This document shows positions 6,690-48,412 of a DNA stretch of 64,000 nt, in pieces. Position 1 is the stretch's first letter. Each line of letters begins with the position of its first letter. The DNA is taken from IMG/VR virus record IMGVR_UViG_3300029286_000009, positions 124,001 to 188,000 of that record. The stretch is one strand, 5' to 3'. The notes beneath the pieces are model-generated. The model was given only the letters and a program-made list of their open reading frames with translations, ran no database searches and was not told the origin of the DNA. Both the position numbers and the translations under genes were made by a program.

Positions 6690-6898
6690 TTTTCGCTCCC
6701 GCTCTCCCTCTTACGCAAAGATTCTTTTGATGTCGGTCCGACTCGAATGTGTGCGAATTCTGTGTTTTCAAACCAGATAAAACTTCCATCTGTAAACCCA
6801 ATGCGGATAACATCATCATCGGCTGCTTCACTTCCGTTTATCTTCGTTGAAGAAATTGTTTTGCCTATAATTTGGTTTAATTTATTTTGATTTTCCAT
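6686..6898 (-). CDS. hypothetical protein
   Basis: SD GAAGGAG, coupled. Confidence 0.55.
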   Translation of the reverse strand: MENQNKLNQIIGKTISSTKINGSEAADDDVIRIGFTDGSFIWFENTEFAHIRVGPTSKESLRKRESGSEK

Positions 6899-13874: not shown

Positions 13875-16082
13875 TTAATTTGCCTTCTCCTTGGTGCCGC
13901 TGAGGTATCTGTCAATTTCCTCCACCAACACACGATTGATAAGTTTACGGTTAGGCGATTTGGGCAATGAAGATTTATCCATTACTTCATTCAGTGCTTT
14001 GTCTTCCTTTTCCGCCCACTCGATTAGTTCCTCATACTTCCAAGCACCATTACGAATAGCGAGTAATTCTTCTGCGTCAGGGCGTCGTACGATTACGCCT
14101 TTACCTTCTAGTATTTCTCGTGCCATACGCATGAGACGAACAAGGTGAAGGGCGTGTTTAGAGTTCCCATGAATCGCAATTTTACCTTTTCTTCTGGTGA
14201 TAAGAACTTCGTTTGGAACCGTAAAACACACAACATGTCCATTTTTAACCCTGACAGGATGAATGTGTTGAGACTTACTCAAGTATGCACAGGTTCTAGT
14301 TTTTCCGATATATACCTGATACATTGCACAGTTGCCAAATTCTCTTGGTTTACGATCATAATAGTAAGGGCCCCATACTTGTGATACAATTCCGGCTTGT
14401 AAACACATTATCTGGACATCATCAGCTAGCCTCTTCAGGCTTGTATAGTATATACTACTAAATTTTCGGTATGTGCCGTCTCCGCCAATTAATCCTTCTA
14501 GCATCAATCTAGCTTGTCTTTCGTTAAGTTTGTCTTTAAAATGTGGGAGATGTTTGTTTTTTGCTTTGCCACACAAACCATATATCTCATCAGCAAGTTG
14601 GGCAGAGAATGAGTAAACACATTCTTTTGTAATTCTGCCTGACTTTAGTGTACGCTCATAATAGTATCGCTTCGCACCGTAACATTCTCTCAGATTTTCT
14701 AACCAAGGAATAAGGGGACTAGCAGGGTGTTGCGATATATTTAAAGACTTTGCTTTGTTTTTATAGAAAATTATAGACCCTTCGGCAATATATACACCAA
14801 TCAGCCTAAGTTTTTCGTTAGGTATCGGGTAATCTTCTCTGGGATTACAAGTTAATCTTGCATGAAAAGATCCGTAACGAGATTTTTCTATCTTGTCTAC
14901 CGATATTAGTGCCCAATCTGCCTGCTCTGGGTTGTATTTGATAGTAAAGTTATTGGATTTTTGTCGGTGGGTTCTGGTTACAAGTAATCTATGGTTGCTT
15001 GTCACAACACAGTTAGATTGTTGCATCCTTATCTCATATAGGAACCCAGAAGCTCTGTATGAATCTCGACCCAAGAAATGTTGATACTCTAAATTTCCTT
15101 CAGTGTTGATCGTTCCTAATTTATCGTTCTCAGATATTTCTCTGTATAACTTCCAACCTGTATCAGTCAAAAACTCGGTATCACTTAGATAACAGTCAAA
15201 TCCGTGCTTTTGTTCAAGTTCTGATCTTTTCGGATTACGTTCCTGCTTCCACTTTTCGTAATGATTCCAATCTTCCAGGTGGTTCTTGTAAGCAGAATAT
15301 CTTTGAAGATAGTTTACGAAGTCAGAATCGAATCCCAGCGTTCTGTTCGCCGCCCGTTCTAACACATCCTTGAGATGGTCTACATTAGCCTCTATGTAGA
15401 GTTGTTCAGTCACTACATTAACCATACGAACCATTTCTGGTCCTAGCTGTATCTTGGTGTCTTCCGTCAAGTGGGTCTGATCAACTAACCATTCACCTAC
15501 TTGAAGTTCTATCATTTTCAGAGCACCGTGTAGTTGGTCCTTCGGGAATTTCATTCCTTCTATCCCGTAGTCTGCACGCGTAGGATAGGTGGGCGGGTTG
15601 CTAGTCCAGCGATGATGGTTGCGCATCCTTTTGAGCTGTTGCATAGCGTACCCACTAAAGCGGTGTTTAAGTAGCTTACTGAGGAATGCATCCTTGATTT
15701 TGGAGAACCTTTCCATAAGTGGGTGTGCATAGATGATTGAATCTTCAGGAACGAACAACAGTTCCAGCATATTCGGGTTTCCATCTGCTGCTAATCCGAT
15801 CATTTTTTTAAGTGACCAGATTACAATATCACTATCGGGAACCAAGTCTCTCCTTGTTCCTTTAGCAACCAGAGGAATTACTTCTTTGCTATCAGTTTGC
15901 TCGAAGTTACCAAACCCGTAGAAATATTCTTTAGGAGGAATAGTCGCCCCCCGGTAATCCATATCTGATTCGGGTGTATTTGTCCCGTAAAGTTGAGATC
16001 CTGCGGGGGTAAGATAGACAATGTTTGAACCTATCCAGTTTTTTATGTTTATCAAGCTTCCTTCCCTTCTATAATTCTCCAT
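13875..16082 (-). CDS. Predicted nucleotidyltransferase (Pol-beta superfamily, Nuc-transf/COG3541-like), intein-interrupted
   Basis: GSQLYGTNTPESDMDYRG motif; NPNMLELLF; after intein removal KHGFD|SKHALHLVRLMRMAREIL. Confidence 0.85.
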   Translation of the reverse strand: MENYRREGSLINIKNWIGSNIVYLTPAGSQLYGTNTPESDMDYRGATIPPKEYFYGFGNFEQTDSKEVIPLVAKGTRRDLVPDSDIVIWSLKKMIGLAADGNPNMLELLFVPEDSIIYAHPLMERFSKIKDAFLSKLLKHRFSGYAMQQLKRMRNHHRWTSNPPTYPTRADYGIEGMKFPKDQLHGALKMIELQVGEWLVDQTHLTEDTKIQLGPEMVRMVNVVTEQLYIEANVDHLKDVLERAANRTLGFDSDFVNYLQRYSAYKNHLEDWNHYEKWKQERNPKRSELEQKHGFDCYLSDTEFLTDTGWKLYREISENDKLGTINTEGNLEYQHFLGRDSYRASGFLYEIRMQQSNCVVTSNHRLLVTRTHRQKSNNFTIKYNPEQADWALISVDKIEKSRYGSFHARLTCNPREDYPIPNEKLRLIGVYIAEGSIIFYKNKAKSLNISQHPASPLIPWLENLRECYGAKRYYYERTLKSGRITKECVYSFSAQLADEIYGLCGKAKNKHLPHFKDKLNERQARLMLEGLIGGDGTYRKFSSIYYTSLKRLADDVQIMCLQAGIVSQVWGPYYYDRKPREFGNCAMYQVYIGKTRTCAYLSKSQHIHPVRVKNGHVVCFTVPNEVLITRRKGKIAIHGNSKHALHLVRLMRMAREILEGKGVIVRRPDAEELLAIRNGAWKYEELIEWAEKEDKALNEVMDKSSLPKSPNRKLINRVLVEEIDRYLSGTKEKAN
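14163..15194 (-). mobile_element. Intein (344 aa) with LAGLIDADG homing endonuclease
   Basis: Starts CYLSDTEFLT..GW, ends VCFTVPNEVLITRRKGKIAIHGN with +1 Ser; motifs LIGVYIAEGS and LEGLIGGDG. Confidence 0.9.
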
Positions 16083-16624
16083 TTACTTTTGAACGCCCAG
16101 TCTAGACTTAGTGGTGAGGTTCTCAGTCCTGTTAAACAGAATTCATAGCCGTTTTCGGCCTCAATAGCGTTAACTTCACCAGACTCCATACCTTTCAAGG
16201 CTTCTAGAAAAGAAAGGGGGTAATCTTTTACGACTTGCCACTTCATCTGTGTGAGTAAGCCATTCACCGAGCATCCGGAATCTAGCCATTTGTCCATAAA
16301 CACCTGCAATTTACCTTTACAGTATCTGTAGTTCCAGCAATTTCCTACGGGGCGCATGATGATAGTCTCATCCTCCGACATTTTATTCAGGGCGTCCAAA
16401 AAACTCACCCCACTGTCTGCGAGCTGAGAACAATTACCCGTAACTTCCCACTCTTCTTCTGGGAAGGAATTAACTGTAAGCATAGAGATTACCCACCTGC
16501 CACAATTACAGAGTTCCAGCTTTCCCTGGTTGAATCGATAGTTATTGTTGTTAGCATGCCCTACGGGCCTCATAACGAGACCTTCACACTCTGCCATCTT
16601 CTTCAAAGCGTCTATGAAGTTCAT
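16052..16624 (-). CDS. Protein with three tandem Tad2/DUF2829-like repeats
   Basis: MNFIDALKKM..EEWEV / SFLDALNKM..MKWQV / SFLEALKGM..SKWRI; start moved to ATG 16624. Confidence 0.5.
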   Translation of the reverse strand: MNFIDALKKMAECEGLVMRPVGHANNNNYRFNQGKLELCNCGRWVISMLTVNSFPEEEWEVTGNCSQLADSGVSFLDALNKMSEDETIIMRPVGNCWNYRYCKGKLQVFMDKWLDSGCSVNGLLTQMKWQVVKDYPLSFLEALKGMESGEVNAIEAENGYEFCLTGLRTSPLSLDWAFKSKWRIIEGKEA

Positions 16625-20119: not shown

Positions 20120-20872
20120 TCAGAATGCACAACTTTCCCAGTTTAACAGTTGGTCAAACCGTTTTAGTATCAAACCCGGGTTCTCTTTCCACTCCTTTTC
20201 CCAGATAGTATAAACACTATATCCCAGGTCTTTGATTAACTTTATCCTTTCTTCATCTCTATTCCAAATGTTTTGAGCTGTAAGACCATGATGGATAATG
20301 TCAGATGCACTGTATGTCTCTGGATTAGCATGCCAGAAATTACCATAGAACTCTATTACTACCCCATCTTTTCGAATGATACCATCTGGAAATAACCATG
20401 ATGCTTTCCCATAACTAATCGTCTCAGTAGTCACATTGTCATGGACTTCCTGTAACTCTTTAATAAATTTCTGTTCAATACGACTCCTGTTACAAGAAAA
20501 ATCATTTTTGGTAATCTTTCCTTCTCGCCATGACCTCCTCATATGTTCGCGACGGGCTTCACGTTGCTCTGGGTTATCTCTATACCATTGTTTGACACGA
20601 GCAGACTGTTCCTTTTTAAATCCCTCTCTCCTGGGCTTTGAGACTGCTTTAATAACCTTTTCTCTATATTCTTCATCCTTCCACAAATCTTTACTAATTT
20701 GTCTTAGCTTCTCCTTAGTTTGTGCAATTGTTTCTGGGTTATGTGTCTTTCCATAGAATGAGTTGTTCTCTCCGGTTCTATCTCTGTGGTGGTTACAAAA
20801 TCCAGTTTTATTCATATCTTGGAGAAGCTTCCCGCAAGTTTTGCACCGTTTGTTTAATTTAGGTTTTCCCAT
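20120..20872 (-). CDS. Homing-type endonuclease: NUMOD3-like repeat plus Vsr/EDxHD-like PD-(D/E)XK domain
   Basis: GENNSFYGKTH; FPDG..VVIEFYGNFWHANP..WNRDEER..LGYSVYTIWEKEW. Confidence 0.75.
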   Translation of the reverse strand: MGKPKLNKRCKTCGKLLQDMNKTGFCNHHRDRTGENNSFYGKTHNPETIAQTKEKLRQISKDLWKDEEYREKVIKAVSKPRREGFKKEQSARVKQWYRDNPEQREARREHMRRSWREGKITKNDFSCNRSRIEQKFIKELQEVHDNVTTETISYGKASWLFPDGIIRKDGVVIEFYGNFWHANPETYSASDIIHHGLTAQNIWNRDEERIKLIKDLGYSVYTIWEKEWKENPGLILKRFDQLLNWESCAF

Positions 20873-21821: not shown

Positions 21822-22011
21822 TTGTTGCTCCGTTTATTTCCACATTTTGTGAGTAATCCTCAAGAGCATCACAAAGTTTAGAGAGGCTGTAATGTATGTC
21901 ATCTTCATGACTTACCAGTCTCTCCCACTCCTTTCGCATAACTCTTGCCATATCGAGACACGCCCCTAACAAGGTTTTTGCTGCTATCGGGTCTACTGTC
22001 CTTGCTATCAT
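21790..22011 (-). CDS. hypothetical protein
   Basis: coupled to rpoZ. Confidence 0.5.
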   Translation of the reverse strand: MIARTVDPIAAKTLLGACLDMARVMRKEWERLVSHEDDIHYSLSKLCDALEDYSQNVEINGATNGATNNETYR

Positions 22012-22196
22012 TATTCTTCCTTTCTTACTTTGCCTGCCGCAATCTCCCGTAAAGCAGTTACTATCTCTTTGTTGTCACTCTCAACTAGGGGCTCTGCTCC
22101 TCCCTTTAACTCCTTCACTCTTTTGCTAGTCAAGTGCACCAATTCAAAGCGATTCCCTATTTCATTCAAGCAGTCATCAATGGTTACTCGTGCCAC
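22011..22196 (-). CDS. rpoZ: RNA polymerase omega subunit
   Basis: (M)[51 protein letters not shown]; GTG start after GGAGGAGG. Confidence 0.9.
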
Positions 22197-22347
22197 TATA
22201 TACCTCCTCCATCTTGATATTCGAGTTCTTTGTCCAATTTTGTCCTGAGATGCCGCCAGTAAATGTAAGTAGGAGGGATAGCAGTTGCGATAGCTAATAT
22301 TATTGCTACCCCTACCCTGAAAAGTGTGTCTTCCATTATTCACCAAC

Positions 22348-23324: not shown

Positions 23325-23741
23325 TTACTCTCTCTCTATCGCGTCATGTGTGGTCTCAACTTTTCCACACCTGGAGCATACACGACTCCACGCTAAATAG
23401 TTCCCATCACGAGATATAGCTGTTGGTTTATCCCATTTGTGTTCGCAGTCTCTCTGAATGGCTTCAAGGTTAAGAGCACGCCCGGCAAACTGCGTATCTT
23501 CGGGATCCCAGTCATACCATGTGATATTCCTACTTTCTTTCTGAAGAAAGTCTGGCACGTCTCTAAACACACAGATACCGACGAGACAATCTAGTTCGCA
23601 CAAAAGAGTTTCGACTCCTTCTCTGGTATAGTCTTGAAAGTTCGATAAGTCATACACATCCCAACTCCTGACACCATAATCGTCTTCTTCTGATGTAACT
23701 ATAATCATTTTATTTCCTTTCTTAGCATCCCAAATCAACAT
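23325..23741 (-). CDS. hypothetical protein with C-terminal CxH..CxxC
   Basis: 138 aa. Confidence 0.5.
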   Translation of the reverse strand: MLIWDAKKGNKMIIVTSEEDDYGVRSWDVYDLSNFQDYTREGVETLLCELDCLVGICVFRDVPDFLQKESRNITWYDWDPEDTQFAGRALNLEAIQRDCEHKWDKPTAISRDGNYLAWSRVCSRCGKVETTHDAIERE

Positions 23742-24513
23742 CTATAGTTGTGTATGTTGGGCTACCATAAGTTGCTTGCCCTACCCACACTGCTATTTTA
23801 TCGTTGATGTTCACTCTTACTTCTTCATGTGTATGACCACACAGAATAGAGAGTCTTGCATTTGTTTTGCAAGCCACTTCACTCAATGCCTTACCCATTC
23901 CTACATTGGAAAAGTGGGGAATGTACATATCGTCTGTTGCTAGCCCATTATACATACATGCTCTTACATAGGGTGGGGCATGAGTTACTACAATGATATG
24001 CCTTGCTCCAATCTTTAGTATTTGGTTGGTTAGTCTATTGGATGCTTTATCCGCTATCTTTTGCATCAAACCGAATGTTGCCCCGACTGTCAACCCGTGA
24101 AAATCATATATTGCACGATAGTCATTGAGTAGAAGCCCAGACCGTTGACTTCCGCCAGCACGACCATCCGCCCAGCCATCGTGACCAATTAGATAAGTGT
24201 GATCAGTTAGTTTAATTGCTGTGCAATTAGTAAGCCAAAATAAATTCTTGTGATCTTCTACAGACCTACGAACCATAGCATATACATGCTCGAATGTTGC
24301 CGCGTATATGTCATGGTTTCCTAAAACGAAGTACACAGGCATCGGGAGATTACCTAGCACTTTCAAGTGATATTTGATATGTTTCGCATCGCTAATATCG
24401 CCACTTATCACTACACCATCCGTTTCTGAAGTGGACAACCTACGCAAGAAATCGCCAAGTGCGTGATCATTCAACCATTCCAAATGGGGGTCAGTTACCC
24501 ATGCGAGTTGCAT
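23722..24513 (-). CDS. Calcineurin-like metallophosphoesterase
   Basis: TDPH, SGDIS, GNHD, THAP, CGHTH motifs. Confidence 0.9.
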   Translation of the reverse strand: MQLAWVTDPHLEWLNDHALGDFLRRLSTSETDGVVISGDISDAKHIKYHLKVLGNLPMPVYFVLGNHDIYAATFEHVYAMVRRSVEDHKNLFWLTNCTAIKLTDHTYLIGHDGWADGRAGGSQRSGLLLNDYRAIYDFHGLTVGATFGLMQKIADKASNRLTNQILKIGARHIIVVTHAPPYVRACMYNGLATDDMYIPHFSNVGMGKALSEVACKTNARLSILCGHTHEEVRVNINDKIAVWVGQATYGSPTYTTIDVDLGC

Positions 24514-24929: not shown

Positions 24930-25940
24930 TTATTTACGAAACCGAGCGATGAGTTCCTTTGATGTTACCAGATTCATGCCTCCCTGTCTGAACCGGTCAA
25001 ATGCTTCTTCCATTGGTCCCGTGAAGTCAGCAACACCCGGAATCACAACAGCACTAGTACAATCTGTCACAATAGAGACCTTTTTAGCCAGGAACGGGTC
25101 TTTGGCAGCTATAATATCCAATAGGTCTTGTACAGTCCATGCTAAGCAATGAGATCCTGCCTGCCCTAAAATCCAGACTTCATCGTGGCTGAGTAGATTC
25201 TCTATGAACTTCACATTGAGCTCTCCAACAACAACCCCATCATGGGACTGGGTAACCTCAGGGCGTAACACCGAGTAGTTTTCGGTTAGCACCTTGCCAC
25301 CCTTTATTTGAAAACCGGTCTGTGATCCGCGAGCGACAGCGTGGAAGAATACTGCTTCGTAGAGCGAGGGGTTCATTGCGTGACCGGTTTCCCCGAGCAT
25401 TGTATGGTAGGGCCAGATCATCAGGGCGTACTTGCCAGTCGCACTAAGGCACTCTGTGTAGTACTGGCAATACTTCTGTAACCACATCAGCGGGGCGTTA
25501 ACCTCCTTACAGAGTGCTGGATTGAGTTTCCACAGACCAGTTTTCACATCTTTCTCGGAGAGAATGGTTCCAGGGGACGGGTGTTCACCATGGTCGTTTA
25601 CCCACGCTATCGAGAAGAATATCTGGTAGAGCATATGCGTATCCAAAGTAGGGCAAATTCGAGTGATCACGTCCATTAGCTCGTAAATCAGAACGCAGGT
25701 ACGGTTAGTATCGTCAATAGCTCCATGACCACTCCTACCCGTCACTGGCAGATTACCGTCGCTGTTTACGAAATCAATTTGTCCATCAATAATAAGCAAG
25801 CAGATTTTCAATGTGTCACTGGCTGCCGGTTTGAAGTTGTGGGTTCTCGCCCAGTCTATAGCGTCTTTCTGAAGACTGATCATATCGACTTTGCGCCGTG
25901 TATCGGTAAGTGTCGAATTATAAACTGCTGGAATTGGCAT
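24930..25940 (-). CDS. Cysteine hydrolase (isochorismatase/nicotinamidase-like)
   Basis: LLIIDGQIDF, TLDTH, WPYH, GQAGSHC, DCTS. Confidence 0.75.
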   Translation of the reverse strand: MPIPAVYNSTLTDTRRKVDMISLQKDAIDWARTHNFKPAASDTLKICLLIIDGQIDFVNSDGNLPVTGRSGHGAIDDTNRTCVLIYELMDVITRICPTLDTHMLYQIFFSIAWVNDHGEHPSPGTILSEKDVKTGLWKLNPALCKEVNAPLMWLQKYCQYYTECLSATGKYALMIWPYHTMLGETGHAMNPSLYEAVFFHAVARGSQTGFQIKGGKVLTENYSVLRPEVTQSHDGVVVGELNVKFIENLLSHDEVWILGQAGSHCLAWTVQDLLDIIAAKDPFLAKKVSIVTDCTSAVVIPGVADFTGPMEEAFDRFRQGGMNLVTSKELIARFRK

Positions 25941-25951
25941 GATTTCTCTCC

Positions 25952-27814
25952 TCAGGAAATTTTGACTAGACTGATATAGTGTGCCGACACAGCATATATG
26001 CCGCCGCTTCCTGCTTGTATCCTGTGTCCGCTGTTGATAAATGGTTCTGTGTCTGGGAAGGTCTTGTCCACGAAGATGGTATGAGATTTATCATATGTTA
26101 TGCGTGCTAGACCTCCGTCGGTTGCTGCAAATAGGTAGTTCCCAGCTGGTGTCTTTCCTCTGATTGTTCCTGCCCAACTACCATCTTGCCATGTGGTAGT
26201 GGTGTGTGCGAGGGGACTACCAAGAGAGTCTATGACCGTCCATGCAGTACGGGTGATGCCTTGATCTTGGTAGGCAACACCGAACCAGGCAATATTGCCA
26301 CTAAACAAGCATGTCGAGTCTACAAGCTGCCCTCGTATTGTAAGAGGAAGTTTGACGAAGTTATTAATGCCAGGCAGTTTTGCATTAAAGACGAATGCAA
26401 AATCAACTTCTCCTGCTCGGTAGAAACCAAACCCGAACTTTTCTCCTACCCAAAACAAGGATTGCCCGCTAAGTATATCTCCAATATATGTTGGAGCATA
26501 CACGTCTTCTCTCATTAACCTCCCATTCTCCACCCAGTATAGGTGGTGAGAGTTGACATCAAAAATAGGTAGATTTCCAAATTGATCGATGTTCCGTATT
26601 TCTTTTCCATTGAGCAATCGAGAACCCTTACCAACAAAAGTACTGGAAGGTGTGATTCTAAAACGCAGAAATGGGTCTAAATCGCCTTCTATAAAAGTTT
26701 GCCCTGTTTCCCGTTTGAATTTTCCACCTTCATGATACAACCAGAGCAAGTTACCCATGTAAGCGGTGTGAAGAATAGTTCCTTTCGTTTCGAAAATACG
26801 CTCGCACGTGACTTGTCCTCTTACCTGTATGGTTACGTGCTTCTGGGGTAGTTGGGTCTGACATATGGGGCATGTATGGCGACAGTGGGTTGCCCCGCAT
26901 AATTTGCACGTTTGCCATACTACTCTCTCGATAAGCTTTAAAGGAAATTTTCCGCGTAAGTCTTTCGTAAAGACTTGCTGAAAATGATGTAGTAAGTCAT
27001 CGGTTAAAGCTTCAAAATGTATTGCTGCTTTAGGGTATCTTACGTCAGGATGAAACACTGAGATTCTCTTGAGGGGGCGTTCTTCGTCTTGTAATAGATT
27101 CTTTCCAGTGGCTTTATAGACGCCTTCGTACGGAGCTACATACAACCAAGATTGGAATAAGAGAACATTGAAAGCGTACCAGTCAGAATCTAGTGTATGC
27201 GGATTTACCATTACAAGACGTTCTAGGGCAGGATCGCATAATAGTGGGTCTACAAATTTGGCTGTAAAAGTTTTGCAAAGGTAGGGACCAAACTGTGTGG
27301 AGTCTGCATCAATAACAAAAACATCCATATACTTAATTAGAATGTTAAGGTCATTTAGAGCGTCTCCTAACACCACACCTAAGTTGTGTGCTTCTGTGAT
27401 CCCATAGTGGAGATTCTGTGCGATGTGAGTAATCTGGTCATTCGATATCCCGCCACCCTCCCTGAACTTCCTTTCGCTATATTTCAGGATTACTTCAGCA
27501 TCTGCAACTAACGGCATCGAATACCCGATGATATTTCCGCCCTTCTCCCTAATCAAATCATTACCTTTTACTACACAGGACGGAAATGTTTGTTGTAGGA
27601 AAGCGGGGAGTTTTTGTTGGTGTTCTTTGATCCTCTCGTCAGCCATCTTCTGGGCATGCGGTTGTCCACGGTAATCAGAGTGGTTAGGGGGTTTAAATAT
27701 TTTGGCGATCAGACCGGGAGTTAACCTGTAGATGTCTGCTTCGCCCCCCTTGCCCCCAGACAATGCGTCTTTGGGAGTAAGAATCGTTTTCTTCCCACAA
27801 ATGTAAATATCCAT
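25952..27814 (-). CDS. Ser/Thr kinase-like protein of TerY-P type with long C-terminal domain
   Basis: GGKGGEADIY, IAKIF, VLGDALNDLNILI, IDADS, DWYAF; CKLC/CPIC Zn ribbon. Confidence 0.8.
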   Translation of the reverse strand: MDIYICGKKTILTPKDALSGGKGGEADIYRLTPGLIAKIFKPPNHSDYRGQPHAQKMADERIKEHQQKLPAFLQQTFPSCVVKGNDLIREKGGNIIGYSMPLVADAEVILKYSERKFREGGGISNDQITHIAQNLHYGITEAHNLGVVLGDALNDLNILIKYMDVFVIDADSTQFGPYLCKTFTAKFVDPLLCDPALERLVMVNPHTLDSDWYAFNVLLFQSWLYVAPYEGVYKATGKNLLQDEERPLKRISVFHPDVRYPKAAIHFEALTDDLLHHFQQVFTKDLRGKFPLKLIERVVWQTCKLCGATHCRHTCPICQTQLPQKHVTIQVRGQVTCERIFETKGTILHTAYMGNLLWLYHEGGKFKRETGQTFIEGDLDPFLRFRITPSSTFVGKGSRLLNGKEIRNIDQFGNLPIFDVNSHHLYWVENGRLMREDVYAPTYIGDILSGQSLFWVGEKFGFGFYRAGEVDFAFVFNAKLPGINNFVKLPLTIRGQLVDSTCLFSGNIAWFGVAYQDQGITRTAWTVIDSLGSPLAHTTTTWQDGSWAGTIRGKTPAGNYLFAATDGGLARITYDKSHTIFVDKTFPDTEPFINSGHRIQAGSGGIYAVSAHYISLVKIS

Positions 27815-27823
27815 AACACTACC

Positions 27824-28684
27824 TCATACAAGGGGGCCCGAGAATCGCTTACACACCACTACTGTAGTGTCGTCTGATAGCATCCCAAGTGCACGCAAGG
27901 ATGGACGAGTGATAGGGTTGGCCTTGGCTAGGAAACGTTGTAATTGGGCTGGATGATCATACCACGTTGCATCCTCCCAGATGTTCTGTATATTAGGAAT
28001 TATGACATCATTTCTACCAGGCAAAGTATGTCCTTCTTTCGCAAGGAAATCATCTATACCGTCTGTGGCTATTGCGATCGAAGTAACATCTCGGGGAAGC
28101 TTAACGATAGAGAATTGTCTGCAGGTCCCAGCATCCGGGTGATTCGCATCCAATTGATGGGCTAAATACGGCGGGGCATTTCCAGGAAATGGTCCTAACG
28201 CGGTGTGTTCTCCTTCAATCCAAATATGCCCGTCGCCAAAGTGAAATGCAAAACTCAGGTTGGGTGATAGATAGAACCCAATCACTGTAAAAAGATAACT
28301 TTCATAGATTAGATTCTTCACTACGTTCTCGTCGTCAGTAATGTCCACAGTACCCGCACGAATTAGCTCCAATAGTCTCTGGCGGCAACACTCCATTACC
28401 CAGGTAGGAATATCCTCCTCTGTAACCCACCAGGAGACGCGGCGTGCGTGTATTACAAGTGCAGGCACCAGATGCACTAATACTTGCGTGCATATTCGAG
28501 AACCAACTTCACTGAAACGCCCCGATCCGCAACCATCCGATACTACTGCGACTATATAGCCAGGGGTAGAAATGTGATCATACGCGTCTTGGTTGTTATA
28601 ACCCGCCGAATCATGGAAGGTACCTATTACACTCGCACCTGCAATCTTGTAGTTGTGCATTATATTCTCCGCATCGGGTAGCAA
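27824..28684 (-). CDS. PP2C-like protein phosphatase
   Basis: GASVIG..H..NNQDA, VVSDGCGS, FGDG, IATDG, DDTT. Confidence 0.85.
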   Translation of the reverse strand: MLPDAENIMHNYKIAGASVIGTFHDSAGYNNQDAYDHISTPGYIVAVVSDGCGSGRFSEVGSRICTQVLVHLVPALVIHARRVSWWVTEEDIPTWVMECCRQRLLELIRAGTVDITDDENVVKNLIYESYLFTVIGFYLSPNLSFAFHFGDGHIWIEGEHTALGPFPGNAPPYLAHQLDANHPDAGTCRQFSIVKLPRDVTSIAIATDGIDDFLAKEGHTLPGRNDVIIPNIQNIWEDATWYDHPAQLQRFLAKANPITRPSLRALGMLSDDTTVVVCKRFSGPLV

Positions 28685-28771
28685 AGAATGCCGCTTACTG
28701 TTGATTCAGTTATCAGAGATGGCATGTTGTATCCTTTCGAGAGGGGGCGGTTACCCACCCCCACTGTTGTA

Positions 28772-29593
28772 TCAAGTAGTAAAGCCACCTAGCACGGTTT
28801 GGCTGCCAAAACCTGCTTGGGAAACCGGTCCCAGGTTGGCTGCTTGAGAGACCGCGATGGCACTTTGAGAAAAGACAGCAAACGCTTTTCGGATGTCAGA
28901 CGCTGAATTTCCTGGGGTGAGGATCCACTGTGCAGGAATCCCCATACCGGTAAATACGCGGGTAAAGTTGGTATGACGGTCTTCTATACCCATCCCAACT
29001 ATAATATTACGCTCCATACGCAAGAGGTCCTCTGCAATAGTCTTAACATCTTGGGCGGACACCCCGCGTGAGGCGTTGTCTGCCCCATCAGTTGCGAACA
29101 GTGTAACTGTTCGGCAGGACTGTGCTTCTTCAGCAAGTTCTTGTGCTTTAAGGAAAACTGTTCCAAGTACCACCTTAGCTTGTGCATAAAGAGGAGTACT
29201 CCCGTAGCTTGGATCGTAAACACCAAGACCGAAAGGTGGCACGTTGTCCAGCTCGCAATAGGGGGTGTAAACTTGTCCAGATAGTGCACGAGCGTGGAAA
29301 AGAATGGCGTCCTTTTGTTTAGATTCTTTTAATGCTCGGATACACCCGTTCACACCCTTTACCATGGCATCAGGACCATCTTTGATGCAACTGATGGATC
29401 CGGAGTCATCAATTAGTAGAGTAACCAATATCACTGTGGAGGGTAGTTGCATCTGCCCCACATTGTTCCCCATGCCACCCTGGATTTGGGCACCAATATC
29501 CTGCAAGTTTAGAAGGTTGGCAGAAGTAGGGGACAACACCCCGTCGTCTTGTGCAGACTGGAGTAAGTTCTGAAGACTTGCGTTCTGGCTCAT
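28772..29593 (-). CDS. vWA-domain protein (TerY-like)
   Basis: MIDAS-like LLIDDSGSI, STPLY, ATDG.DN. Confidence 0.8.
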   Translation of the reverse strand: MSQNASLQNLLQSAQDDGVLSPTSANLLNLQDIGAQIQGGMGNNVGQMQLPSTVILVTLLIDDSGSISCIKDGPDAMVKGVNGCIRALKESKQKDAILFHARALSGQVYTPYCELDNVPPFGLGVYDPSYGSTPLYAQAKVVLGTVFLKAQELAEEAQSCRTVTLFATDGADNASRGVSAQDVKTIAEDLLRMERNIIVGMGIEDRHTNFTRVFTGMGIPAQWILTPGNSASDIRKAFAVFSQSAIAVSQAANLGPVSQAGFGSQTVLGGFTT

Positions 29594-30143: not shown

Positions 30144-30205
30144 TACATCGTTAGTTGCCTAGCGTATTCCGTTCGCTTATTCATGCTTTAGGCGCTTGAA
30201 AATTC

Positions 30206-30280
30206 CGTGTCGCACTACTGCTATGCTACCACGCCATATTTTTTGGGGGCGTGGGGTGGATCTGCACCACCGTCTACACG
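30206..30280 (-). ncRNA. Circularly permuted tRNA-like domain (Y RNA/YrlA-like or two-piece tmRNA-like)
   Basis: CGTGT-AGAC-GGTGG-TGCAGAT-CCACC-CCACGCC-C-CCA-AAAAATAT-GGCGTGG-TA-GCAT-AGCAGTA-GTGC-G-ACACG; all four cloverleaf stems pair, 3' half precedes 5' half. Confidence 0.75.
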
Positions 30281-30431
30281 TAAGTTGCCATAGCACTGCT
30301 AATGGGAAATTGCTTAACGGCGTTTAGCCTTGGGTCAATCACCTCACGGGATTTAGCCTGATACACCCCTATGCCGTAGTGGGTGCTCTTGTGAACGTGC
30401 TCCTAAGCTTACGACCCAACTGTATGGAACC

Positions 30432-30519
30432 TTCTTGCTTGCTAGATAGTATATTCGTCTAATTATTTAACGTCCAATCGCCCCAACTAACTATTTGTAC
30501 ACTACCTAGCAAGCAAGAA
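30432..30519 (-). repeat. 22-bp inverted repeat (long hairpin)
   Basis: TTCTTGCTTGCTAG arms are perfect; extension pairs via two G-U only on minus strand. Confidence 0.85.
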
Positions 30520-30605
30520 AGTCCTGGTATTTTTGGCGGTGTGCCATCTACCTACACATGTGTAGCATGTAGGGTGGCTAAAGACAGCACACCACAGACA
30601 TAACA

Positions 30606-31376
30606 TTAACTGGTGGTTCGTATCGCGTCCAGAAAGCAGGAATAAACTTCTTCTCCTATCGCTGCGACGGGCACCGCCACCTGATTGGCACGTGCTCTTG
30701 CCTGCTTTACCTCACGTATCATCTGGTCAAGGACACTGAGTCCAACCATCTTCTGCCGTGGGGTGGGGCAACCGGTGTAACGTGTATTCTCATAGTGACC
30801 AACGACCTTTTGTTCGTCAACCACAATGACCTGTTCCTTATGTTCTTTTGTCGCGGGGGCGATGGACACGGGAACCTTCGTCATCTCGGTCTTATTCGCC
30901 TTTACAGGCTCAACAGTTCGACGTACACCTTCCAGCTCAGCAGATGTGTCGTTCTCCCAGTGTACGGTTGTATCCAGCGTAGGAATCCTGTCCGCAAGAT
31001 TCCGAATCCGGATAAGTTCTTTTTCAAGCCACATCAACATCGTGACCGGAACTGCTGTGATCACTTTGCCATTGGGCAGCGTAAGATCTGCAACCGCCTG
31101 CATATTGGCGAGCTCACGCTGGTACTCGGCGTCCATGCGATCAACAATTGCCTTGCCTATATACTTAAATCTTTCCGGCACGGTTGTCGTCAGACTGACC
31201 CTTTCTCCAGCACCGGCTTCCTCCGCCACACGATCATCGTCGTGCATCTTCAAAATTTTAACGTGTCCATTGAGCAGTTCTTTCTTGTCCAAGAGTCGAC
31301 TGGTCTCGTCCAGCATCTTAGCCTGAACCGCCTCCAGCTCCGGAATTTTTGCCAAAAGTTCGTGCAACATTCCCAT
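30606..31376 (-). CDS. Conserved coiled-coil protein (recalled as DUF7873-like)
   Basis: LHELLA, TTV, VPVTMLMWLEK, IPTLD..W, ATKEH.EQV, VVG, VKQARARAN pattern; family name from memory only. Confidence 0.55.
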   Translation of the reverse strand: MGMLHELLAKIPELEAVQAKMLDETSRLLDKKELLNGHVKILKMHDDDRVAEEAGAGERVSLTTTVPERFKYIGKAIVDRMDAEYQRELANMQAVADLTLPNGKVITAVPVTMLMWLEKELIRIRNLADRIPTLDTTVHWENDTSAELEGVRRTVEPVKANKTEMTKVPVSIAPATKEHKEQVIVVDEQKVVGHYENTRYTGCPTPRQKMVGLSVLDQMIREVKQARARANQVAVPVAAIGEEVYSCFLDAIRTTS

Positions 31377-41829: not shown

Positions 41830-43320
41830 ATGCGAGCCAAGTTGCCATATTGGGATAAAACTATGGAGTTAGCTCTTAATGTGGCTTTTGCAATAAGAGA
41901 TACAGGTCATTCCGTGTATGTTAACGGTGGACAGGCTCGTGAGTCTGTATTAGCGGTATTGGAAAATCGTGACCTTCACCCCGCTAAAGACATCGATATG
42001 TGCACATCAATGCCTGTTAGTGTAATGAAGCAATTGATAGTAGATGCACATATAGTGCCTACTGGTGAACAGTACGGGACGCTTACGTTTGTAAAGGATG
42101 GTGTTAGTGTAGAGGTTACCCAATACCGGAAAGATTTTGGTGATGTGAACGGCCCAACTGACAATCGTAAAGAGGTTTTCCCCACATTTTCATGTGACCC
42201 TGTTAGTGGTCCTCATTTTGACGTAGCCCGCCGTGACCTTACTATCAATGGGCTCTTGATAGACCCTTTTACAAGAGAAGTCATCGACTATGTAGGTGGA
42301 GTTGAAGACCTTTGTGCACACAAGATTAAGTTTATTGGAGGTGCTGTTGAGCGTTGCAGAGAAGATGCTCTTCGGTTGTTGCGGGCTATACGTTTCGCGG
42401 CACGCTATGATTACTCTCTGTCTCCTGAGGTGTTTGATGCAGCCGAAGACGAAATCGTGCAGAGACGCCTGAAGCTTCTGTCCGCTGAACGTGTAAGAGA
42501 TGAGTTCTTGGCCATTATGTCTGTTGAATCAGGGCACAATGTGGCGTGGGCACTCACAATGCTCGCTGAATTTGGTGTGCTGGGTTTCTGGTTCCCCGAA
42601 CTAGTTGCTATGATGGACGTGGAACAAAACATATATCACAGCCATGATGTTTGGGGACATACACTATTAGCTGTTGAACAGTCTGATCCTAATTTATATT
42701 GTCGTTTATTCGCTTTGTTCCATGACATAGGCAAACCCCCAACACAAGAGTTCGTTCATGAGGATTATGGCTACTCGTTTCATGGTCACCCCCATGTATC
42801 GTGTGATATGTTGGACACAATATTCGAACGATTGCGTTTCGGGCAAACCCGTACAGGCCAGTATGATTTTAATACAGACATACTTAAACATCTGGTGGGG
42901 CACCACATGGATGCATTCATTGATGGCAAGATGTCGCGTATGCTAAAACGTATTGGTATCGCACAGTATGGGAAGCATATGCTCGATTTGTCTTGGCGAG
43001 CAGGACGAGCAGATTTCTACGGAAGGAGCCCCAGGTGGCAAGTCAACCCGGATTTTCGGGGGGCAGACGAAAAGCTGCACCATACATACAATAAGGTTGC
43101 TGCTTACATCCATAGCATAGAGAACCCAGTGTTCTCAACTCGCGATTTGCAAATCGACGGGCGAGTAGTCATGCAAGAACTCCAAATTCCTCCGGGACCA
43201 GTTGTAGGTGAGGTGCTGAAACACCTTTTAGCTACAGTTCAAGATAACCTGGTTGCTAACACACAAGAGGAACTACTGTCTGAAGCTAAGCTGTATTGGC
43301 GAACCAGGGGTATAAACTAG
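41830..43320 (+). CDS. cca: Class II nucleotidyltransferase (CCA-adding/poly(A) polymerase family) with HD domain
   Basis: GGQAR..DID, RRDLTINGL, EDALRLLRAIRFAAR, SAERV.DE, HDVWGHT, LFHDIGKP. Confidence 0.85.
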   Translation: MRAKLPYWDKTMELALNVAFAIRDTGHSVYVNGGQARESVLAVLENRDLHPAKDIDMCTSMPVSVMKQLIVDAHIVPTGEQYGTLTFVKDGVSVEVTQYRKDFGDVNGPTDNRKEVFPTFSCDPVSGPHFDVARRDLTINGLLIDPFTREVIDYVGGVEDLCAHKIKFIGGAVERCREDALRLLRAIRFAARYDYSLSPEVFDAAEDEIVQRRLKLLSAERVRDEFLAIMSVESGHNVAWALTMLAEFGVLGFWFPELVAMMDVEQNIYHSHDVWGHTLLAVEQSDPNLYCRLFALFHDIGKPPTQEFVHEDYGYSFHGHPHVSCDMLDTIFERLRFGQTRTGQYDFNTDILKHLVGHHMDAFIDGKMSRMLKRIGIAQYGKHMLDLSWRAGRADFYGRSPRWQVNPDFRGADEKLHHTYNKVAAYIHSIENPVFSTRDLQIDGRVVMQELQIPPGPVVGEVLKHLLATVQDNLVANTQEELLSEAKLYWRTRGIN

Positions 43321-46720: not shown

Positions 46721-47821
46721 ATGCCAAGTGACACAATTGTAAGATGTGCACGAGTTGATGCTATTACTGAGCATCCCCACGCAGACAACTTGTTGATATT
46801 GGACATTCTTGGTTGGCAAGTAATTACTAATAGAGACACAAACCCCAAGGTAGGAGAGTTAAGAGTTTTTATTGCACCTGATCTTATTCTTCCTCAGGAA
46901 TTGGCAGAGCAACTAGGAGTTACTGTATATTTAAAAAATGGGAATCGGGTAAGACAAGTAAAGCTCAGAGGAATTATGTCATTTGGTATCGCCGCGTCTA
47001 ACCATTGGAATTTCCAAGAGGGCGAAGAAGTATCTGAGCAACTAGGTATAACAAAGTATAGCCCTCCTGAAGAGTTCACAGTCGGTGATCAAGCACGGGA
47101 ACATCCACTTTTTACTCACTACTCTAACATCGAAAACTTTAGAAACTTTCCTAAAGCTTTTGAGGAAGGTGAAGTGGTAGCAATTTATGAAAAGATTGAA
47201 GGAACAAACTCTAGAATGGGAGGTGTTCGTATAACTGAAGCAGAAGTTATGGGTGTTGACCAGAGAATGCCTATCCCCCGTAAACACTTGCACCATGAGA
47301 CTTTTGTGGGGTTTATGATTGGCTCTCATAGCACACAAAAGAAGTTTGAGGCCGCTAAACCTACGATTTACGCATCTCCCTATAACCCACACGTTCGGGA
47401 TGCAATTTGCAAAATTATGTATGACTATAATGCCAACGTGGTCATTTTCTTTGGAGAAATATTTGGTAGGGGCATTAAGAATGGTGCTAGAAGTATGACT
47501 TACGGAAGGAACACACCGGACTGGCGGCTATTCGATATTTACATAGACGGTAGATTCGCTGGTGTTCAGGAACTAACTAATTTGGCAACTCTATACGGAC
47601 TAGAGTTAGCTCCTCTCCTTTATTGTGGGCCATTTAGTTTGGATGCCTTAAAATTGCATGCCAATCAACCAACTCAGTTAATGGACCAAAGCCCCCATCT
47701 CAGTGAAGGAGTGGTCATAAAGCCTCTAAGCGAACGTGTGTATGATGGGTGCAGGCGTCTCTTGCTCAAATACAAGAGCGACGCCTATGAGGAACTAAAA
47801 GCAAAGGGAAAAGCTGGGTGA
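46721..47821 (+). CDS. RNA ligase, DRB0094/Rnl5 family
   Basis: N-terminal OB (HPHADNL..GWQVI..FIAPD), VRQVKLRG..SFG, EKIEGTN, FGEIFG, FDI, EGVVIK, KYKSDAY. Confidence 0.85.
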   Translation: MPSDTIVRCARVDAITEHPHADNLLILDILGWQVITNRDTNPKVGELRVFIAPDLILPQELAEQLGVTVYLKNGNRVRQVKLRGIMSFGIAASNHWNFQEGEEVSEQLGITKYSPPEEFTVGDQAREHPLFTHYSNIENFRNFPKAFEEGEVVAIYEKIEGTNSRMGGVRITEAEVMGVDQRMPIPRKHLHHETFVGFMIGSHSTQKKFEAAKPTIYASPYNPHVRDAICKIMYDYNANVVIFFGEIFGRGIKNGARSMTYGRNTPDWRLFDIYIDGRFAGVQELTNLATLYGLELAPLLYCGPFSLDALKLHANQPTQLMDQSPHLSEGVVIKPLSERVYDGCRRLLLKYKSDAYEELKAKGKAG

Positions 47822-48407: not shown

Positions 48408-48412
48408 AACTA

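What the first reader, a model, noticed from the sequence alone, without database searches (positions are those of the whole stretch)
24930..29593. TerY-P-like vWA/PP2C/kinase triad plus cysteine hydrolase carried by a phage
Seen: four co-directional, tightly spaced genes in the order vWA, PP2C, Ser/Thr kinase, isochorismatase/nicotinamidase-like hydrolase. Established: the TerY-P triad is a bacterial stress/anti-phage module. Inference: the phage uses a phosphorylation switch with a hydrolase effector for inter-phage competition or host takeover. It lies directly downstream of the tRNA-like RNA on the same strand, so RNA and triad may be one system.
Basis: partly seen in the sequence, partly recalled or inferred. 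Interest (0 to 1): 0.6.

Follow-up and report, generated by a model that had tools for sequence, protein, structure and literature searches.

The report
Phage-borne kinase switch wrapped around nicotinamidase
A freshwater jumbo phage carries a four-gene bacterial module in which a vWA protein, a PP2C phosphatase and a Ser/Thr kinase are tied to a nicotinamidase of NAD+ salvage, a pairing I found in no paper I could search.

Summary
Four co-directional minus-strand genes at 24930-29593 encode a vWA protein with a complete MIDAS motif, a PP2C_2 phosphatase, a 620-aa Ser/Thr kinase (kinase, Zn ribbon, beta-propeller) and a 336-aa long-form nicotinamidase.

The kinase is a remote homologue of E. 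coli YegI (hhalign 98.4%), so "TerY-P-like" is fair.

The four genes form a conserved tetrad. The kinase family gave at least 516 confirmed hits in species genomes. In 74 of 93 loci the order is PP2C>kinase>nicotinamidase>vWA. The window and its jumbo-phage relatives have the vWA gene first.

The bacterial context points to NAD+/ADP-ribose metabolism, not to defence islands:
- an NrtR gene lies beside 49 loci;
- an NrtR-type operator (TAGTGT-N7-ACACTA) lies before the PP2C gene in 53 of 69 loci;
- ADP-ribosylglycohydrolase and PncB genes are often inserted or adjacent.

In 301 sampled cyanobacterial species the nicotinamidase occurs in 80, and the kinase and vWA only in the same 6. The triad therefore looks like an accessory to a housekeeping enzyme, not the reverse.

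The phage copy has no NrtR gene or operator. The "tRNA-like RNA" was not detected as a tRNA or an Rfam family and is not conserved with the module.

Best reading: a phospho-switch coupled to nicotinamide salvage, co-opted by jumbo phages. The mechanism is inferred.

The parts
28772..29593 (-). vWA-domain protein (273 aa, P0001). It has a conserved N-terminal extension of about 50 aa, a complete MIDAS motif (DxSxS...T...D) and a conserved Ser-rich C-terminal tail ending in GGF.
   Evidence: There is no Pfam hit. ESM Atlas neighbours by structure and features are VWA and vWA-TerF-like clusters. The MIDAS residues are D62/S66/T133/D169 invariant and S64 nearly invariant; S242, S244 and S249 are also invariant in 47 homologues. 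It is 49% identical to the cyanobacterial cassette protein.
27824..28684 (-). PP2C-type Ser/Thr phosphatase (286 aa from the TTG start; probable ATG start at 28660).
   Evidence: PF13672 PP2C_2, E 2e-21, covering the whole profile. BLASTP against E. coli PphC gives E 1e-4. It is 31% identical to the cyanobacterial cassette PP2C.
26924..27814 (-). Kinase gene (P0003), residues about 1-297: a eukaryotic-type Ser/Thr protein kinase domain with motifs GKGGEAD, K38/K41, GDaLNDLN, IDADS and SDWYA.
   Evidence: AlphaFold model pLDDT 94. Foldseek hits are protein kinases such as PDK1, Aurora B, PKA and LRRK2. hhalign to YegI 18-331 gives probability 98.4%, E 9e-15. The invariant residues are listed and the motif blocks.
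26849..26917 (-). Kinase gene, residues about 300-322: a four-cysteine Zn ribbon (C303, C306, C315, C318).
   Evidence: The four Cys are invariant in 78 homologues. The stretch aligns with the YegI Zn ribbon. There is a weak Nop10 Zn-ribbon match.
25955..26818 (-). Kinase gene, residues about 333-620: an all-beta, WD40-like propeller domain. E. coli YegI has membrane helices in this position instead.
   Evidence: The secondary structure is all beta strands with pLDDT above 90. Foldseek hits are WD40 propellers and the LRRK2 kinase-WD40 arrangement. hhalign to YegI stops at residue 322.
24930..25940 (-). Long-form nicotinamidase (PncA/Pnc1-like cysteine hydrolase, 336 aa, P0004). It has candidate triad residues D52/K213/C265 and candidate metal ligands D100/H102/H179.
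   Evidence: Model pLDDT 93. The top Foldseek PDB hits are nicotinamidases (2wta E 5e-13, TM 0.78 by target; Pnc1, PncA). The three PncA motif blocks align. The invariant residues are listed. Atlas clusters are named putative nicotinamidase. It is 50% identical to the cyanobacterial cassette enzyme.

Best explanation
The locus is a self-contained four-gene module. A TerY-P-type phosphorylation triad is dedicated to a nicotinamidase, the enzyme that turns nicotinamide, the leaving group of every NAD+ cleavage, into nicotinate for Preiss-Handler resynthesis. The triad consists of a MIDAS-bearing vWA protein, a PP2C phosphatase and a Ser/Thr kinase with a Zn ribbon and a beta-propeller.

Shown:
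- The four genes travel together across phyla and into phages.
- In bacteria the operon sits behind NrtR operators.
- It often includes ADP-ribosylglycohydrolase or PncB genes.
- The nicotinamidase also exists alone in many genomes, whereas the kinase and vWA were found only beside it.

Inferred for bacteria:
- ADP-ribose released by NAD+ consumption lifts NrtR repression.
- The kinase and PP2C pair then sets the phosphorylation state of a partner. The most likely target is the vWA protein, through its invariant Ser-rich tail, or the kinase itself.
- The vWA MIDAS site and the propeller act as binding platforms.
- Nicotinamide clearance and NAD+ recycling are thereby coupled to a cellular signal.

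Inferred for the phage: a clade of freshwater jumbo phages captured the module without its NrtR control and moved the vWA gene to the front. The window's phage also keeps an unlinked ADP-ribosylglycohydrolase of the same type. It would express the module during infection to keep nicotinamide salvage and NAD+ recycling running, or to manage ADP-ribosylation, possibly against NAD+-depleting host immunity.
For: Gene identities.

Conservation as a unit:
- All four genes in the same order in 74 of 93 loci. Most exceptions lie at contig ends.
- Spirulina keeps the nicotinamidase on another contig.

NAD+ context:
- NrtR in 49 loci, ADP-ribosylglycohydrolase in about 20 and NAPRTase in 12.
- The palindrome TAGTGT-N7-ACACTA, with at most one mismatch, lies within -400..+60 of the PP2C start in 53 of 69 bacterial loci. 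26 of them have two tandem sites.
- This matches the published NrtR core GT-N7-AC in a 21-bp palindrome, and ADP-ribose is the published NrtR effector (PMC2330246).

Phyletic nesting: among 301 cyanobacterial species the kinase is in 6, the vWA in the same 6 and the nicotinamidase in 80. The nicotinamidase stands alone in 20 of 20 triad-less genomes inspected. It forms one clade with the triad-linked copies.

Phage lineage:
- The window, P0005, P0006, L087, P0009 and P0010 form a clade with support 100 in the kinase tree.
- The window, L087 and L098 (which encodes P0009) form one in the nicotinamidase tree.
- The vWA gene comes first in all members whose context was seen.
- The phage ADP-ribosylglycohydrolase is 44% identical to the cassette-linked one.
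- The record is a phage: terminase large subunit, CheckV completeness 96%.
Against: - No enzymatic or binding data exist.
- Triad-linked nicotinamidases show no conserved Ser or Thr that stand-alone ones lack, so direct phospho-control of the enzyme has no sequence support.
- The phage encodes no NAPRTase, NMNAT or Nudix gene. It could only feed a host pathway.
- Clearing nicotinamide would also relieve product inhibition of NAD+-consuming enzymes, so the net effect on NAD+ is not predictable from sequence.
- The distribution is patchy (2% of sampled cyanobacteria) with cross-phylum transfer, which is also what a conflict system looks like.
- Some CPR (candidate phyla radiation) contigs labelled as bacterial MAGs could be mis-binned phage DNA.
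- The window's kinase has a one-residue insertion in its catalytic loop, shared only with its nearest relative.
Confidence: 0.5

Rival explanations
1. The module is an anti-phage or superinfection-exclusion system of the TerY-P kind, with the nicotinamidase as effector. On sensing a competitor, the switch activates the hydrolase. The hydrolase removes nicotinamide and starves rival phages' nicotinamide-dependent NAD+ reconstitution, or acts on a larger nicotinamide nucleotide and depletes NAD+.
For: - The architecture is TerY-P-like and the kinase is homologous to YegI.
- TerY-P-like triads are reported as stand-alone defence systems (PMC11090510).
- The distribution is patchy and horizontally mobile.
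- The enzyme has about 130 residues more than classical PncA, which leaves room for a larger substrate.
- It is carried by phages, which often carry defence genes against other phages.
Against: - The hydrolase is the same orthologue that stands alone as a single-copy gene in 74 of 80 nicotinamidase-bearing cyanobacterial genomes, so it is unlikely to be toxic.
- The operon is under NrtR operators and linked to PncB, which is typical of salvage metabolism.
- The cyanobacterial flanks are housekeeping genes (BolA, PucC, an acyltransferase), not defence genes.
- The kinase carries a propeller, not the OB fold of the validated defence triads.
- PADLOC gives no TerY-P hit, but the E. coli triad gives none either, so this test is uninformative.
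Confidence: 0.2
2. The module is a system for reversing ADP-ribosylation. It resembles the ADP-ribosylglycohydrolase-centred ("ARG-centric"), NrtR-controlled operons proposed to undo ADP-ribosylation. The vWA protein would act as a chaperone for modified proteins, the kinase and PP2C as a switch, and the nicotinamidase only as a clean-up enzyme.
For: - Iyer et al. 2022 (PMC9503650) describe ADP-ribosylglycohydrolase operons with Nudix-HTH regulators, phosphatases and vWA chaperones.
- About 20 tetrad loci have one or two such genes inserted between the PP2C and kinase genes.
- The phage keeps a 44%-identical glycohydrolase.
Against: - The glycohydrolase is present in only about a fifth of the loci. 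It is 86 kb away in this phage.
- The invariant partner of the triad is the nicotinamidase, not the glycohydrolase.
- That paper does not mention a kinase, PP2C or nicotinamidase in these systems.
Confidence: 0.15
3. The kinase-like protein is a small-molecule kinase, for example for a pyridine nucleoside or ADP-ribose. The module would then be a purely metabolic pathway and not a protein phospho-switch.
For: - The protein-kinase-like fold includes small-molecule kinases.
- Source annotations call some homologues Bud32-like.
- The context is metabolic.
Against: - The domain aligns with YegI, which autophosphorylates on serines (bioRxiv 10.1101/819920).
- It keeps the protein-kinase subdomain IX motif D-W-Y/F-A.
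- It is always paired with a PP2C protein phosphatase.
- It carries protein-interaction domains.
Confidence: 0.07

Closest known systems
TerY-P triad (Anantharaman, Iyer and Aravind 2012, as summarised in PMC11090510); E. coli YegL / PphC / YegI
   Same: Both have three adjacent co-directional genes: a vWA protein with MIDAS, a PP2C_2 phosphatase and a Ser/Thr kinase followed by a Zn ribbon. The kinase plus ribbon aligns to YegI residues 18-331 at hhalign probability 98.4%. The PP2C matches PphC at E 1e-4.
   Different: - A fourth, nearly obligatory gene (the nicotinamidase) sits inside the operon.
- The kinase ends in a soluble beta-propeller where YegI has two membrane helices and the Gao 2020 defence versions have an OB fold.
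- The vWA protein is barely similar to YegL (hhalign probability 15%).
- No ter genes, nucleases or restriction genes are linked.
- The operon is NrtR-controlled.
Nicotinamidase PncA / Pnc1 (isochorismatase-like cysteine hydrolases)
   Same: It has the same fold, and the best structural matches are nicotinamidases. It keeps conserved Asp, Lys and Cys residues, and Asp/His/His residues in the PncA-like motif blocks. Linkage to NrtR and PncB matches classical pncA-pncB operons (PMC2330246).
   Different: It is about 130 residues longer (an N-terminal extension and an insertion). It scores below every Pfam and NCBIfam threshold. In this module it is flanked by signalling genes. Its activity is untested.
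Phage NAD+ reconstitution pathways NARP1, NARP2 and NARP3
   Same: All are phage-encoded genes acting on products of NAD+ cleavage, in the setting of NAD+-centred phage-host conflict (PMC13464706).
   Different: None of the three uses a nicotinamidase or a kinase, PP2C or vWA protein. This phage lacks a NAPRTase/Nampt-family gene (PF04095), an NMNAT-type gene and a Nudix gene. It cannot rebuild NAD+ by itself.
ADP-ribosylglycohydrolase-centred ("ARG-centric") NrtR/WYL-regulated systems (Iyer et al. 2022, PMC9503650 section 3.8)
   Same: Both have a Nudix-HTH (NrtR-like) repressor predicted to sense ADP-ribose, a vWA protein, phosphatases, and ADP-ribosylglycohydrolase genes in a subset of loci.
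   Different: The core here is the kinase, PP2C, vWA protein and nicotinamidase. The glycohydrolase is optional. The phosphatase is a PP2C, not a rhodanese-phosphatase, calcineurin-like, HD or HAD enzyme.
LRRK2-type kinase-WD40 proteins (structural analogy only)
   Same: A protein kinase domain is followed by a beta-propeller in one chain. These are the top Foldseek hits over the full length.
   Different: Sequence identity is about 11%, the RMSD is very high (about 20 A) and the intervening Zn ribbon is different. No homology is claimed.

Membership tests
TerY-P triad (vWA + PP2C + Ser/Thr kinase with Zn ribbon) | A Ser/Thr kinase fused at its C-terminus to a zinc ribbon and homologous to triad kinases such as YegI | tested here: met
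   hhalign of the family alignment against YegI gives probability 98.4%, E 9e-15, over residues 15-322 including the ribbon. The four Cys are invariant. The fold is a kinase.
TerY-P triad (vWA + PP2C + Ser/Thr kinase with Zn ribbon) | A PP2C-like phosphatase encoded beside the kinase | tested here: met
   PF13672, E 2e-21. It is adjacent in all loci that have upstream sequence. BLASTP against PphC gives E 1e-4.
TerY-P triad (vWA + PP2C + Ser/Thr kinase with Zn ribbon) | A TerY-like vWA protein with a MIDAS metal site | tested here: inconclusive
   The vWA fold and a complete MIDAS motif are supported. Specific kinship to TerY/YegL is weak (hhalign probability 15%), and there is no Pfam VWA hit at E<=1.
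TerY-P triad (vWA + PP2C + Ser/Thr kinase with Zn ribbon) | Linkage to ter genes or to restriction or DNA-processing genes | tested here: not met
   Clustering of all flanking ORFs in 93 loci gave NrtR, ADP-ribosylglycohydrolase, PncB and housekeeping genes. No ter genes or nucleases recurred.
TerY-P-like stand-alone defence system (Gao et al. 2020) | Kinase fused to a C-terminal OB fold; matches to defence-system profiles | tested here: not met
   The C-terminal domain is a beta-propeller. The OB-fold criterion is taken from PMC11090510. PADLOC gives only a weak PD-T4-6 kinase hit. The E. coli triad behaves the same way, so the profile test alone is uninformative.
TerY-P-like stand-alone defence system (Gao et al. 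2020) | Protection against phage infection | not testable with these tools
   This needs a plaque or efficiency-of-plating assay.
Nicotinamidase (PncA/Pnc1) | Isochorismatase-like fold closest to nicotinamidases | tested here: met
   Foldseek against the PDB ranks nicotinamidases first: 2wta (E 5e-13, TM 0.78 by target), Pnc1 and M. tuberculosis PncA.
Nicotinamidase (PncA/Pnc1) | Asp-Lys-Cys catalytic triad and Asp/His/His metal site | tested here: met
   D52, K213, C265, D100, H102 and H179 are invariant in 43 homologues. The D52, WPxH and C265 blocks align to PncA. Assigning D100/H102 as metal ligands rests on motif resemblance to known PncA and is an inference.
Nicotinamidase (PncA/Pnc1) | Reaches the curated family thresholds (PF00857; NCBIfam PncA) | tested here: not met
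   There is no Pfam hit at E<=1. NF008623 scores 14 bits against a cut-off of 174.
Nicotinamidase (PncA/Pnc1) | Hydrolyses nicotinamide to nicotinate | not testable with these tools
   This needs an enzyme assay.
NrtR regulon (bacterial homologues only) | A 21-bp palindromic operator with core GT-N7-AC in the promoter, and an NrtR gene nearby | tested here: met
   TAGTGT-N7-ACACTA lies before the PP2C gene in 53 of 69 bacterial loci. NrtR lies beside 49 loci. The core is defined in PMC2330246. The phage copy has no such site.
Phage NAD+ reconstitution pathways (NARP1-3) | Enzymes that rebuild NAD+ (Nampt or Namat, NMNAT, ADPR-PP synthase, or PnuC with NadR) | tested here: not met
   PF04095 (NAPRTase family), PF01467 (CTP_transf_like, the NMNAT superfamily) and PF00293 (Nudix) gave no match in the 260-kb phage record. 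PnuC, NadR and the ADPR-PP synthase were not searched.

The most novel reading that the evidence does not exclude
The tetrad is an undescribed signalling-metabolic device that senses NAD+ cleavage or ADP-ribosylation and gates nicotinamide clearance by Ser/Thr phosphorylation. Freshwater jumbo phages have stripped it of its ADP-ribose-responsive repressor. They would use it as a regulated counter-measure to NAD+-depleting immunity, that is, a further phage route into NAD+ restoration that runs through nicotinate and the host Preiss-Handler pathway.
Probability: 0.2. Interest if true: 0.78.

Novelty: new variant of a known kind. Interest (0 to 1): 0.62.

Why it matters
NAD+ has become a central battlefield between phages and bacteria. 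The known phage counter-measures rebuild NAD+ from ADP-ribose, nicotinamide or nicotinamide riboside. None involves nicotinamidase, and none is wired to protein phosphorylation.

This locus shows that a TerY-P-type kinase, phosphatase and vWA triad has a conserved, specific partner in NAD+ salvage. The physiological role and substrates of such triads are still unknown, even in E. coli. The same operon is under the ADP-ribose-sensing repressor NrtR in hundreds of species.

That gives the triad a testable output and a testable input. It also identifies a module that jumbo phages have repeatedly kept. Three of the four proteins lie outside current Pfam and NCBIfam models, so the module is invisible to routine annotation.

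Tried and rejected
- BLASTN of the locus against 50,697 phage records found no match. TBLASTN of the kinase found only two distant hits in huge uncultured phages.
- Sequence-only searches of the PDB with single proteins and with family profiles gave only marginal hits: PncA E 0.04, kinases E 0.1, nothing for vWA. Structure prediction was needed.
- PADLOC gave no TerY-P match. I rejected this as evidence because the E. coli YegL/PphC/YegI control also gives none.
- Complex prediction of kinase plus nicotinamidase returned no verdict. It is not evidence either way.
- A search for Ser or Thr positions conserved only in triad-linked nicotinamidases, as candidate phosphosites, found none. Only G215 and F245 differ.
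- For the tRNA-like RNA, ARAGORN and Rfam gave nothing at either threshold. The spacer is not conserved in related loci and is unique in the phage genome.
- The DUF7873, metallophosphoesterase and other window neighbours are absent from the 93 loci. DUF7873 recurs within 8.5 kb in L098, and the same family is called near the kinase on the P0010 contig.
- The CTP_transf_like gene near the tetrad in L098 is a generic sugar-phosphate adenylyltransferase-like protein, not a recognisable NMNAT.
- The maximum-likelihood tree with the default method did not finish in time. FastTree was used instead, so supports are SH-like only.
- The Anantharaman 2012 Ter paper is not in the held library. Its definition of the triad is taken second-hand from PMC11090510.
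- The search for homologous proteins was run only on the kinase. The big representative search was not used.

Full report
**What is there**

The window is bases 124001-188000 of a 259.7-kb IMG/VR virus record that CheckV rates 96% complete. The record encodes a terminase large subunit. The window itself holds typical large-phage genes: RlaP, RNA ligase, a CCA-adding enzyme and an RIIB-like protein.

On the minus strand, 29593-24930 holds four ORFs of 273, 286, 620 and 336 aa. The last three are separated by only 9 and 11 nt. Contigs from four other freshwater and lake metagenome runs cover the stretch piecewise without a single difference. The locus is therefore real.

**Gene identities**

Only the second gene is recognised by a curated family (PF13672 PP2C_2, E 2e-21). 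The other three have no Pfam or NCBIfam assignment, so I used homologue alignments and structure prediction.
- Gene 1 is a vWA protein. The ESM Atlas model's neighbours, by structure and by features, are VWA and vWA-TerF-like clusters. The MIDAS residues D62, S64, S66, T133 and D169 are invariant or nearly invariant in 47 homologues.
- Gene 3 folds with pLDDT 94 into three parts: a eukaryotic-type protein kinase, a four-cysteine Zn ribbon and an all-beta propeller. A profile of the family aligns to E. coli YegI residues 18-331, ribbon included, at hhalign probability 98.4%. YegI is an experimentally shown autophosphorylating Ser/Thr kinase of the yegL-pphC-yegI triad (bioRxiv 10.1101/819920).
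- Gene 4 folds with pLDDT 93. Its best PDB matches are nicotinamidases: A. baumannii PncA (E 5e-13), yeast Pnc1 and M. tuberculosis PncA. D52, K213, C265, D100, H102 and H179 are invariant in 43 homologues, and the PncA motif blocks align.

By the definition quoted in PMC11090510, the triad is a TerY-like vWA protein, a PP2C and a kinase with a C-terminal Zn ribbon.

**The four genes are one unit**

The kinase has more than 1,250 full-length relatives at 45-66% identity. They come from Patescibacteria, Cyanobacteria, Gammaproteobacteria, Planctomycetota, Acidobacteriota and one Aenigmatarchaeota MAG. Nine IMG/VR contigs also carry it.
- In 74 of 93 loci, all four genes lie on one strand in the order PP2C > kinase > nicotinamidase > vWA. 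Most exceptions end at contig edges.
- In Spirulina the nicotinamidase is on another contig of the same genome.
- Only the window and its closest relatives have the vWA gene first. These relatives come from contigs of 210-660 kb.
- They form a clade with support 100 in both the kinase tree and the nicotinamidase tree. The module was therefore inherited as a block within a jumbo-phage lineage.

**What the context says**

I clustered every flanking ORF in the 93 loci and scanned representatives against Pfam. Three recurrent companions emerged:
- an NrtR regulator (Nudix plus NrtR winged helix) just upstream in 49 loci;
- one or two ADP-ribosylglycohydrolase genes, inserted between the PP2C and kinase genes, in about 20 loci;
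- nicotinate phosphoribosyltransferase (PncB) in 12 loci.

The promoter regions carry a striking palindrome, TAGTGT-N7-ACACTA, often twice in tandem and overlapping a TTGACA box. Exact copies occur in 48 fetched loci. With at most one mismatch it lies within -400..+60 of the PP2C start in 53 of 69 bacterial loci. This fits the published NrtR operator, a 21-bp palindrome with core GT-N7-AC. ADP-ribose is the published effector that releases NrtR (PMC2330246). The bacterial operon is thus very probably a member of the ADP-ribose-responsive NAD+ regulon.

**Which part is accessory**

In an even sample of 301 cyanobacterial species, the kinase occurs in 6 genomes and the vWA protein in exactly the same 6. 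The long-form nicotinamidase occurs in 80.
- In 20 of 20 triad-less genomes inspected, the nicotinamidase is a stand-alone gene. Two of the 20 have a divergent NrtR beside it.
- Stand-alone and triad-linked cyanobacterial enzymes form a single clade.
- They differ at only two conserved positions, neither of them a Ser or Thr.

The enzyme is therefore an ordinary, autonomous component of nicotinamide salvage, and the triad is an optional attachment to it. This is the reverse of "defence triad plus hydrolase effector".

**The phage copy**

The phage module has no NrtR gene and no operator. The phage record has no NAPRTase-family, NMNAT-type or Nudix gene. It does have, 86 kb away, an ADP-ribosylglycohydrolase 44% identical to the cassette-linked one of Pseudanabaena.

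The window's kinase and its nearest relative share a one-residue insertion in the catalytic loop (GDaLNDLN). All catalytic residues are kept.

**The upstream RNA and the 30606 gene**

ARAGORN and Rfam find nothing in the window. The 462-nt spacer 30144-30605(-) folds far better than shuffled controls (z -4.1) and has a long near-perfect hairpin. It is unique in the phage genome and absent from related loci.

The DUF7873 gene at 30606-31376 recurs 8.5 kb from the kinase in L098, and the same family is called near the kinase on the P0010 contig. It occurs in no bacterial locus. I see no evidence that either belongs to the system.

**Mechanism**

Shown: the gene identities, the unit, the regulon context and the phyletic nesting.

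Inferred for bacteria: NAD+ consumption releases ADP-ribose and nicotinamide. ADP-ribose derepresses the operon. The kinase and PP2C pair toggles the phosphorylation of a partner. The likeliest targets are the vWA protein, through its invariant Ser-rich tail, or the kinase itself. The MIDAS site and the propeller provide binding surfaces. Nicotinamide clearance and re-entry into NAD+ synthesis are thereby tied to a cellular signal.

Inferred for the phage: the module is expressed free of NrtR control to keep salvage running or to manage ADP-ribosylation, perhaps against NAD+-depleting defences.

I put about 0.5 on this NAD+-centred reading as a whole, about 0.2 on a TerY-P-type defence or exclusion function, about 0.15 on a mainly de-ADP-ribosylation role, and below 0.1 on a small-molecule kinase.

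**Comparison with what is known**

The triad matches TerY-P in architecture. It differs in four ways: the propeller, the weak vWA similarity to YegL, the missing links to ter or nuclease genes, and the obligatory nicotinamidase.
- The phage NAD+ reconstitution pathways NARP1-3 do not include a nicotinamidase or signalling proteins.
- The NrtR-controlled operons centred on ADP-ribosylglycohydrolase, described by Iyer et al. 2022, share the regulator, the vWA protein and the glycohydrolase. They do not mention a kinase, a PP2C or a nicotinamidase.
- Four full-text searches for combinations of these terms found no description of the tetrad. That covers the held library only.

I class it as a new variant of a known kind.

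**Limits**

- There are no experimental data.
- Tree supports are FastTree SH-like values.
- Some contigs labelled as MAGs of the candidate phyla radiation may be mis-binned phage DNA. The cyanobacterial cases come from cultured strains with housekeeping flanks.
- The host of the phage is unknown; its habitat is lake and fresh water.

Noticed in passing
window 30144-30605 (-): This 462-nt non-coding spacer folds at -157 kcal/mol against -132 for shuffles (z -4.1). It has a near-perfect hairpin with a stem of about 27 bp and a second long stem. It is not a tRNA (ARAGORN) and matches no Rfam family. It is unique in the phage genome and absent from related loci.
   Followed up: partly
G000:C1:37944-38609 (outside the window; locus L096:1495-2310): The phage encodes an ADP-ribosylglycohydrolase (PF03747, E 2e-30). 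It is 44% identical to the copies inserted in the cyanobacterial tetrad operons but lies 86 kb from the phage tetrad.
   Followed up: partly
bacterial loci L002-L086, about 50-250 bp upstream of the PP2C gene (e.g. L074:4310-4328, L034:4985-5028): A conserved NrtR-type operator, TAGTGT-N7-ACACTA, often occurs as two tandem sites overlapping a TTGACA box. It also occurs in loci with no adjacent NrtR gene, which suggests control in trans. In viral contigs L090 and L091 a single site lies between the kinase and the nicotinamidase.
   Followed up: yes
window 27340-27370 (-), kinase residues 150-157: The window's kinase and its nearest relative P0005 carry a one-residue insertion in the catalytic loop (GDaLNDLN against GDFNDLN in 76 of 78 homologues). 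The window's protein alone also has an extra SG before the glycine-rich loop.
   Followed up: partly
window 13875-16082 (-): This 735-aa RlaP-type RNA-repair nucleotidyltransferase carries a LAGLIDADG domain, which looks like an intein or homing-endonuclease insertion. Elsewhere in the window are an RNA ligase (46721-47821), a CCA-adding enzyme with an HD domain (41830-43320) and an RIIB-like protein (48314-49486).
   Followed up: no
window 22011-22346 (-) and 20120-20872 (-): The first is a phage gene with an RNA polymerase Rpb6/omega domain (E 9e-19). The second is a nearby homing-endonuclease-like gene with I-TevI zinc-finger and NUMOD3 matches.
   Followed up: no
window 30606-31376 (-); L098:16516-17301: A DUF7873 protein lies near the tetrad in this phage and in related huge phages, on the opposite side in the latter. 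It occurs in none of the bacterial loci. This looks like lineage synteny and not membership of the system.
   Followed up: partly
L094:3245-4075 and 6001-6708; LR745208.1 214180-214947; LR756511.1 120787-121443: More distant variants exist in huge phages. One 203-kb viral contig pairs a 30%-identical nicotinamidase with a 25%-identical kinase domain. Two uncultured phages of 485 and 595 kb carry distant kinase relatives.
   Followed up: no
L098:10349-11560 and 15789-16292; the P0010 contig: In the closest huge-phage relatives, extra genes are inserted among the four tetrad genes. They include two nucleoside 2-deoxyribosyltransferase-like proteins (PF15891), a generic adenylyltransferase and, in one contig, a reverse transcriptase.
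   Followed up: partly
L013 (Aenigmatarchaeota MAG); L032 and L040: One archaeal MAG carries the full tetrad with PncB. An Acidobacteriota MAG and a MAG labelled Clostridia carry nearly identical kinase and nicotinamidase sequences, which points to very recent transfer or a binning error.
   Followed up: no
window 23722-24513 (-): A calcineurin-like metallophosphoesterase lies two genes downstream of the nicotinamidase. It is not found beside the tetrad in any other locus.
   Followed up: yes
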